From assembly GCF_000189555.1 (NCBI RefSeq), contig NC_017276.1: DNA of 64,000 nucleotides, one strand, 5' to 3'. The stretch is from Saccharolobus islandicus REY15A. Its GTDB lineage: Archaea > Thermoproteota > Thermoprotei_A > Sulfolobales > Sulfolobaceae. The notes beneath the pieces are model-generated. The model was not told where the DNA came from, made no database searches, and saw nothing but the letters and a program-made list of their open reading frames with translations. Every line of letters starts with the position of its first letter. Within the stretch, counting starts at the first letter, position 1. This document shows, one piece after another, positions 23,319-23,608 of the stretch. Made by a program: the position numbers and the translations under genes.

Positions 23319-23608
23319 CTTTTACGTAACTGCTAATTATTTTTAATTACTTCTAAATATCGTTTTTTAATTAAATAATGTTTATATAGTATTACAATGT
23401 ATTTTCTATTGGTGATCTCCCAACTGATGACGGGTACTGCTCACGAGGTTTGGGGAATGATAAAAGTGTGGATGGGAGGGTAGTGGTGTTTCCCTCGACT
23501 AGCCCCAATGAGTTAAGGGTGACTGTGTATGATCCCTTAGGAGGGGTGCCCGTGGCGGAATTAAAAGTGATTAAAAATAAGGAGAAGTTACGCCACGGGT
23601 AAACACTA
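23319..23608 (+). mobile_element. Non-autonomous IS607-type mini-element A (leader plus TnpB omega-RNA end, no protein)
   Basis: First ~160 bp align with 40488-40630; last ~140 bp align with the 3' end of the tnpB at 39490-39630. Confidence 0.8.

What the first reader, a model, noticed from the sequence alone, without database searches (positions are those of the whole stretch)
23319..23608. Protein-less IS607-derived cassette that could express a stand-alone TnpB omega-RNA (copy A)
The layout is: AT-rich leader with TTTATATA (23381-23388), then a ~30-bp island from inside tnpB (the LMTGTAHEG codons), then a ~95-bp internal deletion relative to the tnpB at 39.5-40.2 kb, then the full 3' scaffold to GGGTAAACACTA. 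The retained island ACGGGTAC (23430-23437) can pair with GTGCCCGT (23546-23553), which would explain its survival as an RNA helix. The predicted start lies just before the island. That gives a ~200-nt scaffold plus a locus-specific guide starting AAAGTGGTAATAATAAATAG, usable in trans by cognate TnpBs. It could work as a MITE-borne guide repertoire or an RNA-guided regulator.
Basis: partly seen in the sequence, partly recalled or inferred. Interest (0 to 1): 0.72.

Follow-up and report, generated by a model that had tools for sequence, protein, structure and literature searches.

The report
Mini-transposon carrying a TnpB guide-RNA scaffold
This is a 295-bp protein-less offshoot of an IS607-type jumping gene, from a large and apparently undescribed family in hot-spring archaea, that keeps the transposon ends, a promoter-like box and the structured-RNA segments of the parent nuclease gene, so it probably makes a guide RNA that a TnpB nuclease encoded elsewhere could use.

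Summary
The window is Saccharolobus islandicus REY15A (CP002425.1 2,232,001-2,296,000). Copy A is a true insertion of 295 bp (23312-23606). A metagenome contig holds the empty site ...CTGAGAC|TAAAAATGG.... It belongs to an abundant mini-element family: at least 85 copies in a truncated scan, 58 of them in Metallosphaera yellowstonensis MK1. The parent is an ISSto12-like IS607 element whose 436-441 aa TnpB has a Cas12f/TnpB fold.

The mini-element keeps only the parts of tnpB where synonymous variation collapses in full-length copies. These are the 'island' (hairpin P1) and the last ~140 nt (hairpins P2, P3, P4 plus an AAACAC tail). The same RNA architecture, with many compensatory changes, occurs in a second TnpB subfamily of ~45% identity.

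Three details are wrong. The island does not pair with GTGCCCGT; that segment sits in P3/P4. The deletion is 85 nt, not ~95. The guide-side flank starts at 23607.

The promoter is plausible but no transcript was examined, and no intact cognate TnpB was found for REY15A. Selfish homing (AGAC motif plus flank-matching guide) fits better than a regulator. ωRNA-bearing protein-less elements are already known for IS200/IS605, so this is a new variant, not a new principle.

The parts
23308..23311 (+). Target-derived motif AGGC, the TAM-like position. It reads AGAC in the empty site and in most family copies. Its last two bases are the presumed crossover dinucleotide of the serine recombinase.
   Evidence: Empty site in L137...CTGAGAC|TAAAA. 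Nested insertions in L034, L079 and L120. Conservation profile and cross-genus alignment.
23312..23360 (+). Left end (TGTAACTCTTTTACGTAAC...). It carries GTAAC/GTTAC repeats and a ~32-bp imperfect inverted repeat of the right end. These are the presumed TnpA binding sites.
   Evidence: About 70-80% identical to the left ends of full-length IS copies over the first ~45-50 nt only. Nt 18-49 of the element (counted from 23308) match the right end in inverted orientation at 84%.
23361..23411 (+). AT-rich module specific to the mini-element. It holds the TATA box TTTATATA (23381-23388) and the predicted start at about G23411/G23412.
   Evidence: No homolog in full-length IS copies. Conserved, with constant spacing to the first hairpin, in Saccharolobus, Metallosphaera, Acidianus, Stygiolobus, Caldisphaera and Acidilobus copies. 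A related module with a TATA box occurs in a second mini-element family. The start site is inferred from archaeal TATA-to-start spacing, not measured.
23416..23456 (+). Pairs are UCUCC/GGGGA, AAC/GUU, and an inner UGACGG/CUG-UCA.
   Evidence: Homology to tnpB 39712-39751. Synonymous diversity is 0.02 here against 0.13-0.25 background in 15 full-length copies. Two pairs show changes on both sides within the family. A hairpin sits at the homologous codons in subfamily S2. There is no thermodynamic signal on its own, z = 0.09.
23459..23461 (+). Junction of the internal deletion. 85 nt of tnpB (39627-39711, including the RuvC-III codons ERD) are replaced by 3 nt.
   Evidence: Repeat arms I1 and I3. 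The deleted stretch has normal synonymous diversity, 0.13-0.21. An Acidianus hospitalis copy (L059) has the 5' module and still keeps the 85 nt, so it is an intermediate form.
23476..23496 (+). Hairpin P2 (GAGGG / CCCUC).
   Evidence: Predicted in copy A. In subfamily S2 it is GAGCCC/GGGCUC, so two G-C pairs are flipped to C-G in all 6 sequences, at the cost of amino-acid changes.
23502..23547 (+). Two-tier hairpin P3. The outer stem is GCCCC/GGGGU and the inner stem is UUAAGGG/CCCUUAA.
   Evidence: S2 has GCACC/GGUGC or GGGCC/GGCCC enclosing GUGUGGGU/ACCCACAC. In the codon-guided register, P2 plus outer P3 pair in 59 of 60 S2 cells, and 4 of 10 pairs are changed on both sides.
23548..23600 (+). 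Terminal hairpin P4 (GCCCGUGGCG / CGCCACGGGU, 10 bp). Its 3' arm lies within the transposon-end 20-mer.
Evidence: S2 has a 12-bp CCCCGCUAACGG/CCGUUAGCGGGG at the same place, with 5 of 10 column pairs changed on both sides and a G-C to U-A swap within S2.
23601..23606 (+). Single-stranded tail AAACAC, the end of the element. The last AC is the crossover dinucleotide. The tnpB stop codon (TAA, 23600-23602) lies 4 nt before the end.
   Evidence: Conservation falls to background after 23606. Empty site. The equivalent tails are AAACGC in S2 and AAACGG in family B.
23607..23626 (+). Flank that a read-through transcript would carry as guide (TAAAAGTGGTAATAATAAAT).
   Evidence: It matches the empty-site sequence directly 3' of AGAC, with 1 mismatch. 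It is unique in the window. Its function as a guide is inferred.
39483..40232 (-). Truncated tnpB of the parent family (249 aa, lacks the N-terminal half with RuvC-I), with an intact right end.
   Evidence: TIGR01766 domain hit at 1.7e-17. It is 76-81% identical to 429-436 aa proteins. The right end aligns to copy A.

Best explanation
Copy A is a non-autonomous IS607-family mini-element (MITE-like, 295 bp). It inserted at an AGAC^TA site between tRNA-Thr and a phosphoesterase gene.

It consists of four parts: the left-end recombinase sites, an internal archaeal promoter module (TATA at 23381-88), a trimmed version of the structured RNA embedded in the 3' end of the parent tnpB gene (hairpins P1, P2, P3, P4 and an AAACAC tail), and the right-end recombinase sites, which overlap P4.

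The RNA scaffold ends exactly at the transposon boundary. A transcript started at about 23411 would therefore read into the flank and carry TAAAAGTGG... as a guide. That guide matches the vacant allele directly 3' of AGAC, while the occupied allele shows ACAC there. This is the same logic as in bacterial IS607 elements (TGGG versus TCGG).

The most likely function is selfish. With a cognate TnpB made by a full-length element in the same cell, the mini-element's RNA directs cutting of empty sites, which promotes its own retention and homing.

Shown: it is a mobile insertion; the family is abundant; it derives from IS607; an RNA structure is conserved; the target motif and flank geometry fit. 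Inferred: promoter activity, TnpB loading, and cleavage. In REY15A itself copy A may be an orphan, because no intact cognate TnpB was found.
For: Insertion and boundaries: the empty site in L137 and nested insertions.

MK1 has 58 mini-elements, RB850M 13, and the Acidianus hospitalis MAG 7. Intact 436-441 aa tnpB genes occur in the same genomes.

Parent: an IS607 element with a resolvase-type TnpA. The TnpB model matches Cas12f, ISFba1 TnpB and ISDra2 TnpB at E 1e-12 to 1e-10. D189, E324 and D387 are conserved.

RNA evidence:
- Synonymous diversity falls to 0.02 at the island and to 0.003-0.08 over the last 40 codons. It stays normal (0.13-0.21) in the 85 nt that the mini-element has lost.
- The same P1-P4 architecture is present in subfamily S2 at ~45% protein identity. 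The cross-family consensus has 29 pairs, 86% of cells paired, and 18 pairs with compensatory change. Slid controls give 36-50% paired.
- In the codon register, 59 of 60 cells pair.
- Within the family, 96% of cells pair, and 11 cells are changed on both sides against 3.9 +/- 1.5 in shuffles, 0 of 500.
- z = -2.0 for copy A P2-P4 and -3.6 for S2.
- Several conserved G-U pairs make the structure specific to the sense strand.

Promoter: the TATA box and its spacing are conserved across six genera. A second mini-element family has an equivalent TATA module.

[quoted passage not shown] The IS607 TAM and right-end logic is described in PMC10690162.
Against: - No transcript data were examined.
- The promoter is not more conserved than the rest of the element. 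One MK1 sub-lineage has TTCATGTA in place of the TATA box.
- This TnpB clade has never been tested. It lacks the zinc-finger cysteines, and the C-terminal 115 residues are modelled poorly.
- The low synonymous diversity could partly reflect gene conversion between full-length copies and the many mini-elements.
- P1 has no thermodynamic signal.
- REY15A: only a truncated family tnpB is seen, and no intact one was retrieved.
- In copy A the TAM-like motif now reads AGGC.
Confidence: 0.6

Rival explanations
1. Inert relic. Copy A is simply a deletion derivative of the IS, mobilised through its ends. The interior RNA-like segments and the TATA box are leftovers with no present function.
For: - The whole element is about equally conserved, as expected after recent bursts.
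- Many copies are truncated or decayed.
- AT-rich Sulfolobales DNA makes TATA-like octamers common.
- No intact cognate TnpB was found for REY15A.
Against: - Two separate deletions removed exactly the parts of the IS without extra constraint and kept the constrained ones.
- Stems are kept in 96% of cells, and changes are enriched in predicted loops (25 of 71 loop columns versus 14 of 69 stem columns).
- The TATA box and spacing are retained even in GC-rich Acidilobus copies.
- The promoter-plus-P1 module was re-used on a different scaffold in the chimeric copy at 40.5 kb.
Confidence: 0.25
2. Small-protein gene. The mini-element expresses a leaderless mRNA for a 57-63 aa peptide made of the C-terminal tail of TnpB (..DGRVVVFPSTSPNELRVTVYDPLRGVPVVELE..KLRHG), for example as a modulator of TnpB or TnpA.
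For: In 38 of 68 distinct copies an ATG/GTG at the predicted start opens a reading frame that runs to the natural tnpB stop. Three different frame solutions across the deletion junction preserve it.
Against: - Polymorphic sites show no third-position excess: 14 of 47, 12 of 46 and 13 of 47 for codon positions 1, 2 and 3.
- The commonest polymorphisms are non-synonymous but neutral for RNA pairing, for example V/A, which is U/C opposite G in P4.
- Copy A's own frame stops after 23 codons.
- The intact frames are mostly near-identical recent copies.
Confidence: 0.07
3. DNA-level element only. The conserved hairpin-forming segments are recombinase (TnpA) binding or synapsis sites, not RNA.
For: - The last ~22 nt (AGTTACGCCACGGGTAAACAC) are shared by otherwise unrelated elements.
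- The left and right ends contain GTAAC/GTTAC repeats and a 32-bp inverted repeat.
- The 3' arm of P4 lies in this end sequence.
Against: - Serine recombinases act on double-stranded DNA and need no hairpins.
- P1, P2 and P3 lie 60-190 nt inside the end.
- Conserved G-U pairs would be A-C mismatches on the other strand.
- Helices are kept by compensatory changes that alter the TnpB protein.
Confidence: 0.05
4. Host-exploited guide pool or regulator. This is the reader's wider idea: the mini-element RNAs act as a repertoire of guides against other DNA, or as RNA-guided regulators.
For: There are dozens of different flanks per genome, at least 58 in MK1. Domesticated TnpB relatives that regulate transcription exist (title and abstract of 10.1101/2023.11.30.569447, listed).
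Against: - Each guide is simply whatever DNA lies next to the insertion, and it matches its own empty site.
- No second match to the copy A guide exists in the window.
- No matches to the element were found in plasmid or phage collections.
- The catalytic residues of the TnpB are intact, unlike nuclease-dead regulators.
Confidence: 0.03

Closest known systems
IS607-family TnpB with its ωRNA (for example the Clostridium botulinum IStron TnpB, PMC10690162, and the ISFba1 TnpB with RAGATH-18 reRNA, PDB 8iaz)
   Same: - A serine-recombinase TnpA plus a TnpB.
- The RNA scaffold lies at the 3' end of tnpB and ends at the right boundary.
- The guide is the flanking DNA.
- The target motif 5' of the left end (AGAC) differs at position -3 from the right-end terminus (ACAC), as TGGG versus TCGG does there.
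- A crossover dinucleotide is repeated at both junctions.
   Different: - Archaeal (Sulfolobales and other Thermoprotei).
- The TnpB lacks zinc-finger cysteines, and its ORF runs to within 4 nt of the element end, so the whole scaffold is coding.
- No Rfam family matches.
- Here the RNA sits in a protein-less derivative with its own promoter.
PATEs, the protein-less IS200/IS605 derivatives that encode ωRNAs used in trans (Meers et al., PMC10055086)
   Same: A non-autonomous element without genes that keeps the transposon ends and a guide-RNA scaffold, and depends on TnpA and TnpB made elsewhere.
   Different: - Different transposition chemistry: Y1 HUH transposase with palindromic ssDNA ends there, serine recombinase with dsDNA ends here.
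- This family has a dedicated internal TATA promoter.
- Its scaffold is shortened by an internal 85-nt deletion.
SMN1 / SMN2 non-autonomous elements of Sulfolobus islandicus (Berkner & Lipps 2007, as cited in PMC3718332 and PMC3839810)
   Same: Same host species and similar size (~320 bp). They have no terminal inverted repeats of the classic MITE type, and they derive from a TnpB-carrying IS.
   Different: SMN1 is tied to ISC1733, an IS200/IS605 element. All 7 REY15A copies lie in the variable region at roughly 0.3-0.9 Mb. Copy A lies at 2.255 Mb and derives from an IS607 element. I could not compare sequences directly, because the SMN1 paper is not held.
SisTnpB1 / TnpB7 of S. islandicus REY15A (PMC10640517, PMC11043419)
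   Same: Same strain. These are experimentally proven RNA-guided TnpBs with right-end-derived guide RNAs that are visible in RNA-seq.
   Different: They belong to the IS605 and IS1341 groups (TAM TTTAA/TTTAT, right end ...TTCAC). The 26 TnpBs listed there were found with DraTnpB as query and all fall into the IS605 and IS1341 groups, so the present clade is not among them.

Membership tests
IS607-family non-autonomous element (MITE-like) | Ends homologous to the left and right ends of an autonomous element that encodes a serine-recombinase TnpA | tested here: met
   The right end is identical over the terminal 20-mer, and the left end is 70-80% identical over ~45-50 nt to full-length copies. 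Resolvase genes lie upstream of tnpB in L002 and L140-L145.
IS607-family non-autonomous element (MITE-like) | No transposase gene, and many copies at unrelated sites | tested here: met
   295 bp, with copy A's longest start-proximal frame only 23 codons. There are 85 copies with variable flanks.
IS607-family non-autonomous element (MITE-like) | Precise insertion with a shared crossover dinucleotide and no target-site duplication beyond it | tested here: met
   Empty site GAGAC|TAAAA against occupied GAGGC-[295 bp ...AAACAC]-TAAAA. Nested insertions agree.
IS607-family non-autonomous element (MITE-like) | Mobilised in trans by TnpA | not testable with these tools
   Needs an excision/integration assay.
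TnpB ωRNA (guide-RNA scaffold) | Encoded at the 3' end of tnpB, ending at the transposon boundary | tested here: met
   P4 and the AAACAC tail end at 23606, which is the boundary. The same holds in full-length copies.
TnpB ωRNA (guide-RNA scaffold) | Conserved secondary structure supported by covariation | tested here: met
   Support is strong for P2, P3 and P4 and weaker for P1.
TnpB ωRNA (guide-RNA scaffold) | The flank-derived guide matches the vacant site next to a conserved adjacent motif (TAM) | tested here: met
   In the L137 empty site, AGAC is followed by TAAAAATGGTAATAATAAAT, 19 of 20 identical to 23607-23626. AGAC is conserved 5' of the copies.
TnpB ωRNA (guide-RNA scaffold) | The transcript exists, is bound by TnpB, and directs DNA cleavage | not testable with these tools
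   No expression data are held. This needs RNA-seq, RIP and cleavage assays.
TnpB ωRNA (guide-RNA scaffold) | Match to a curated ωRNA/reRNA family in Rfam | tested here: not met
   Only the tRNA passes the gathering threshold. Nothing relevant appears at E <= 10 in 23300-23660.
TnpB / Cas12f-like RNA-guided nuclease (parent protein) | RuvC fold with D-E-D catalytic residues and overall TnpB architecture | tested here: met
   Foldseek gives probability 1.0 and E 1e-12 to 1e-10 against Cas12f, ISFba1 TnpB and ISDra2 TnpB. D189, E324 and D387 are invariant or nearly so. The window fragment hits the TIGR01766 domain. Model confidence is moderate (pLDDT 65.7) and low after residue 322.
TnpB / Cas12f-like RNA-guided nuclease (parent protein) | Zinc-finger (CxxC...CxxC) target-nucleic-acid-binding insert, and a score above the curated TnpB HMM cut-offs | tested here: not met
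   There are no cysteines in the region. No Pfam hit to OrfB domains for P0009. NF040570 scores 29 bits against a cut-off of 100, on the fragment only. phmmer against PDB sequences finds nothing.
PATE (IS200/IS605 palindrome-associated element) | Subterminal palindromic hairpin ends recognised by a Y1 HUH transposase | tested here: not met
   The parent encodes a resolvase-type TnpA, not a Y1 transposase.
SMN1 (known S. islandicus non-autonomous element) | Ends derived from ISC1733 (IS200/IS605) | tested here: inconclusive
   The literature places SMN1 with ISC1733, and all 7 REY15A copies in the variable region. That does not fit copy A, but no SMN1 sequence was available for direct comparison.

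The most novel reading that the evidence does not exclude
Sulfolobales genomes carry swarms of self-promoted 'minimal ωRNA' mini-elements: at least 58 in one Metallosphaera genome, in at least two families that exchange promoter and scaffold modules. Together they would form a trans-acting guide pool for a zinc-finger-less, untested TnpB clade. The RNA gene, rather than the nuclease gene, would then be the main replicating unit. A few full-length elements would serve dozens of guide-only parasites, and some guides may have been co-opted by the host.
Probability: 0.2. Interest if true: 0.75.

Novelty: new variant of a known kind. Interest (0 to 1): 0.55.

Why it matters
If the RNA is made and used, three things follow.

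1. It would extend the 'guide-only parasite' idea from bacterial IS200/IS605 PATEs to serine-recombinase IS607 elements and to hyperthermophilic archaea. It would also show that such elements can acquire their own promoter.

2. Nature has already done a deletion experiment. The mini-element marks which 85 nt of the scaffold region are dispensable. That gives a ready-made ~195-nt minimal guide design, plus a predicted AGAC TAM, for a compact thermostable TnpB clade that nobody has tested.

3. REY15A is a genetic model strain, so the predictions can be tested directly there.

Tried and rejected
It has perfect complementarity but no change on both sides and no excess over shuffles. It competes with P3 and P4, which are conserved across subfamilies. 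Rejected.
- Identity with the known SMN1 element. Rejected on literature grounds: SMN1 has an IS200/IS605 parent and lies in the variable region. The original paper could not be read.
- Rfam families, including relaxed thresholds: nothing.
- Sequence searches of the TnpB against Pfam and PDB sequences: nothing useful. Only the fold comparison worked.
- Plasmid and phage collections: no copies. One IMG/VR contig carries the right-end 20-mer.
- Literature search for the element's sequence strings or for ISC1921: no relevant hits.
- Expression evidence: the REY15A transcriptome paper has no supplement held.
- Search for an intact cognate TnpB in REY15A through protein clusters and exact look-ups: not found, but these tools cannot scan that genome.
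- RNAalifold on gappy full sets, and the tool's default run on the mixed-family alignment, recovered only part of the structure because MAFFT misplaces some strands by 1-3 columns. I therefore used a codon-guided register and explicit structures.
- Small-ORF reading: considered and scored low.
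Full report
**Where we are.** The window is Saccharolobus (Sulfolobus) islandicus REY15A, CP002425.1 positions 2,232,001-2,296,000, in the record's orientation. Loci fetched by exact protein look-up are 100% identical to the window. Copy A lies between tRNA-Thr (22833-22907, minus strand) and a 509-aa phosphoesterase gene (23775-25304, minus strand).

**Checking the observation.**
- The TATA-like octamer lies at 23381-88.
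- A 40-nt island (23419-58) is 88% identical to tnpB 39712-39751.
- A 107-nt block (23462-23568) is 89% identical to 39520-39626, and the homology continues to ...GGGTAAACAC at 23606.
- Between the two blocks tnpB has 85 nt where copy A has 3. The deletion is therefore 85 nt, not ~95.

The tnpB at 39.5-40.2 kb is only a 249-aa C-terminal fragment. Full-length relatives are 429-441 aa.

**It is a real mobile element, with exact boundaries.** A metagenome contig (L137) carries the same neighbourhood without the element. It reads ...TTCTATAAGATCTGAGAC|TAAAAATGGTAATAATAAATAGG..., against ...CTGAGGC-[TGTAAC...GGGTAAACAC]-TAAAAGTGG... in REY15A. The insertion is thus 23312-23606 (295 bp).

The AGAC just upstream belongs to the target. 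Its last two bases recur as the last two bases of the element (...ACAC), as expected for a serine-recombinase crossover dinucleotide. Three nested insertions into other repeats give the same answer. AGAC, or rarely GGAC or AGGC, precedes the copies in all genera examined.

**It belongs to a large family.** Of the 143 matches in the 128 loci then held (8 of them fetched earlier), 85 have the copy A architecture: left-end motif at about -280, TATA at about -225, and island at about -180 from the right end. Twenty are full-length or longer forms, and 32 are truncated or share only the terminal ~22 nt.

Metallosphaera yellowstonensis MK1 alone has 58 mini-elements. Copies also occur in a Sulfolobaceae isolate, Acidianus hospitalis, Stygiolobus, Caldisphaera and Acidilobus. 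Intact 436-441 aa tnpB genes sit in several of the same genomes.

The element is not SMN1, the known S. islandicus mini-element. SMN1 is tied to ISC1733 (IS200/IS605), and all 7 of its REY15A copies are in the variable region. I found no description of the present family in the held literature.

**The parent.** Full-length elements are about 1.9 kb, with a resolvase-type TnpA overlapping a TnpB whose ORF ends 4 nt before the element end. One database name for a relative is 'IS607 family transposase ISSto12'.

The protein escapes Pfam and PDB sequence searches. An AlphaFold model (pLDDT 65.7, good for residues 1-320) nevertheless matches Cas12f, ISFba1 TnpB and ISDra2 TnpB with Foldseek probability 1.0 and E 1e-12 to 1e-10. 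The RuvC residues D189, E324 and D387 are conserved. There are no zinc-finger cysteines.

The REY15A TnpBs studied experimentally belong to the IS605 and IS1341 groups and are a different clade.

**What the mini-element kept.**
- Only the first ~45-50 nt match the left ends of full-length elements.
- Nt 18-49 of the element (counted from 23308) form an imperfect inverted repeat of the right end, with GTAAC/GTTAC motifs. These are presumably TnpA sites.
- The next ~60 nt, including the TATA box, have no counterpart in the full-length element.
- Then come the island and the last ~140 nt of tnpB.

In 15 non-redundant full-length genes, pairwise synonymous diversity is 0.13-0.25 along most of the gene. 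It collapses to 0.02 over codons 355-366 (YLMTGTAHEGGG, the island) and to 0.003-0.08 over codons 397-436. It is normal (0.13-0.21) across codons 367-396, which is the stretch the mini-element has lost.

An Acidianus copy has the 5' module joined to the island but still keeps the 85 nt, so the two deletions were separate events. Gene conversion between full-length and mini copies could contribute to this pattern, so I looked for independent evidence.

**A conserved RNA structure.** Copy A's last 138 nt fold into three hairpin domains, followed by AAACAC:
- P2: GAGGG/CCCUC.
- P3: outer GCCCC/GGGGU, inner UUAAGGG/CCCUUAA.
- P4: GCCCGUGGCG/CGCCACGGGU.

The fold has z = -2.0, with 3 of 200 shuffles as good.

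A second TnpB subfamily (S2, ~45% identical, six loci; three encode an intact 207-aa TnpA and two only TnpA fragments) folds into the same architecture with different sequences. Its helices are GAGCCC/GGGCUC; GCACC/GGUGC or GGGCC/GGCCC around GUGUGGGU/ACCCACAC; and CCCCGCUAACGG/CCGUUAGCGGGG followed by AAACGC. Its z is -3.6.

In a register fixed by the protein alignment, not by RNA, P2 and outer P3 pair in 59 of 60 S2 cells. Four of these 10 pairs are changed on both sides relative to family A, at the cost of amino-acid replacements (RV..FP becomes SP..LG).

A mixed alignment of A, S2 and a third family gives 29 consensus pairs with 86% of cells paired. Eighteen pairs show compensatory change. 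Slid controls give 36-50% paired and 5-8 such pairs.

Within family A the 40-pair model is 96% paired. It has 11 cells changed on both sides, against 3.9 +/- 1.5 in shuffles (0 of 500). Several invariant G-U pairs make the structure specific to the tnpB sense strand.

The island forms its own hairpin (P1), and a hairpin occupies the homologous codons in S2. P1 has two covarying pairs but no thermodynamic signal. It is the least secure helix.

ACGGGUAC (23430-37) can pair with GUGCCCGU (23546-53). That pairing shows no change on both sides and no excess over shuffles. It would also destroy P3 and P4. I reject it. The island's survival is better explained by P1.

**Promoter.** The TATA octamer lies about 23 nt upstream of G23411/G23412, a normal archaeal spacing (my knowledge of Sulfolobus promoters). 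P1 begins at 23416.

The octamer and the ungapped spacing are retained in six genera, including GC-rich Acidilobus copies where neighbouring bases have drifted. One MK1 sub-lineage has lost it (TTCATGTA).

A second abundant mini-element family ('B') is derived from an S2-like element. It has its own left end and a comparable TATA module in front of its scaffold. The element at 40480-40790 in this window is a chimera of the family A promoter-plus-P1 module and the family B scaffold.

This all argues for a working promoter, but no transcript data could be examined.

**Mechanism.** The geometry matches bacterial IS607 elements. There, TnpA inserts at TGGG, the ωRNA scaffold ends ...UCGG, and TnpB cuts the vacated TGGG-plus-target joint but not the occupied site (PMC10690162). 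Here the pair is AGAC (vacant) versus ACAC (occupied).

A read-through RNA from copy A would carry TAAAAGTGGTAATAATAAAT, which matches the vacant site at 19 of 20 positions. The simplest function is therefore selfish retention and homing, using TnpB supplied in trans.

Protein-less PATEs that 'often encode ωRNAs' for use in trans have already been noted for IS200/IS605 (PMC10055086). The principle is known. New here are the IS607 and archaeal setting, the dedicated promoter, the trimmed scaffold, and the untested nuclease clade.

**Caveats specific to copy A.** REY15A is reported to hold one intact IS607 element, 'ISC1921'. I could not retrieve it or show that it encodes this clade. The only family tnpB in the window lacks RuvC-I. 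Copy A's upstream motif now reads AGGC. Copy A may thus be a well-preserved orphan: its TATA box is intact and it forms the predicted P1-P4 folds.

**Rival: small protein.** The family consensus opens a 62-63 aa frame at the predicted start and runs to the tnpB stop. It is intact in 38 of 68 distinct copies and is reached by three different frame solutions.

Against this, polymorphic sites show no third-position bias (14 of 47, 12 of 46, 13 of 47). They are commoner in predicted loops than in stems. The commonest changes are non-synonymous yet neutral for pairing. Copy A's own frame stops after 23 codons. I rate this rival low.

**Verdict.** Function remains inferred until a transcript and TnpB loading are shown.

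Noticed in passing
window 40480-40790 (+): 'Copy B' is a chimera. Its first ~125 nt are the family A left end, TATA module and P1. At GGATGGGAGGG it switches to the 3' scaffold and right end (..GTGTAGGGACAAACGG) of a different mini-element family.
   Followed up: partly
loci L011, L038, L061, L105, L110, L116 and others (for example L061:4005-4265): A second abundant ~260-bp mini-element family ('B') has its own left end (GGGCTGAATCCTTTTTCACG..), a TATA-like box, a scaffold related to TnpB subfamily S2, and a hairpin with clear compensatory changes. No full-length parent was seen in the fetched loci.
   Followed up: partly
loci L009:4536, L010:3180, L012:5978, L071:3446, L068:1424 and others: Other repeats share only the last ~22 nt of the right end (AGTTACGCCACGGGTAAACAC) with unrelated interiors. 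One recurring type contains ..AATCCCATAACTGCTG... This suggests further non-autonomous families that use the same recombinase site.
   Followed up: no
L133 (Logan contig SRR5858007_182) versus window 23607 and 39492: This contig joins the right end of the truncated tnpB (100% identical over 221 nt) to the right flank of copy A. The two copies are inverted, 16 kb apart, and share a 31-nt identical stretch. This is either an inversion by recombination in that culture or a k=31 assembly artefact.
   Followed up: partly
window 23363-23569 versus L130 (CP046616.1): The orthologous element in another S. islandicus strain differs at 15 positions, all inside the element, while at least 57 nt on the left and 74 nt on the right are identical. 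This hints at gene conversion from another copy. The P3 and P4 stems are untouched and the one P2 stem change is wobble-compatible.
   Followed up: partly
family consensus, for example L025:5191-5386 (-): A 62-63 aa leaderless frame (MIPLTDDGHCSRGLGSDKSVDGRVVVFPSTSPNELRVTVYDPLRGVPVVELEVIKSKEKLRHG) is intact in 38 of 68 distinct copies. It shows no coding-type substitution pattern.
   Followed up: yes
window 17884-17926 and 22833-22875: A 43-nt copy (91%) of the 3' half of tRNA-Thr lies 4.9 kb away. The flank of tRNA-Thr opposite copy A (window ~22,300-22,640) holds a gene with a fusellovirus SSV1 ORF D-335 domain, with a C2H2 zinc-finger gene further on. This may be the remnant of an integrated virus-like element bounded by the tRNA.
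   Followed up: no
L129:5472-5491 (IMG/VR UViG_3300007812_000019): One viral contig carries the right-end 20-mer. Only ~36 nt of the element match.
   Followed up: no
P0009 model, residues 322-436: The C-terminal ~115 residues of the TnpB are the part whose codons double as the RNA scaffold. They are predicted with very low confidence (pLDDT 23-49). This may reflect a protein segment shaped by constraints on the RNA.
   Followed up: no
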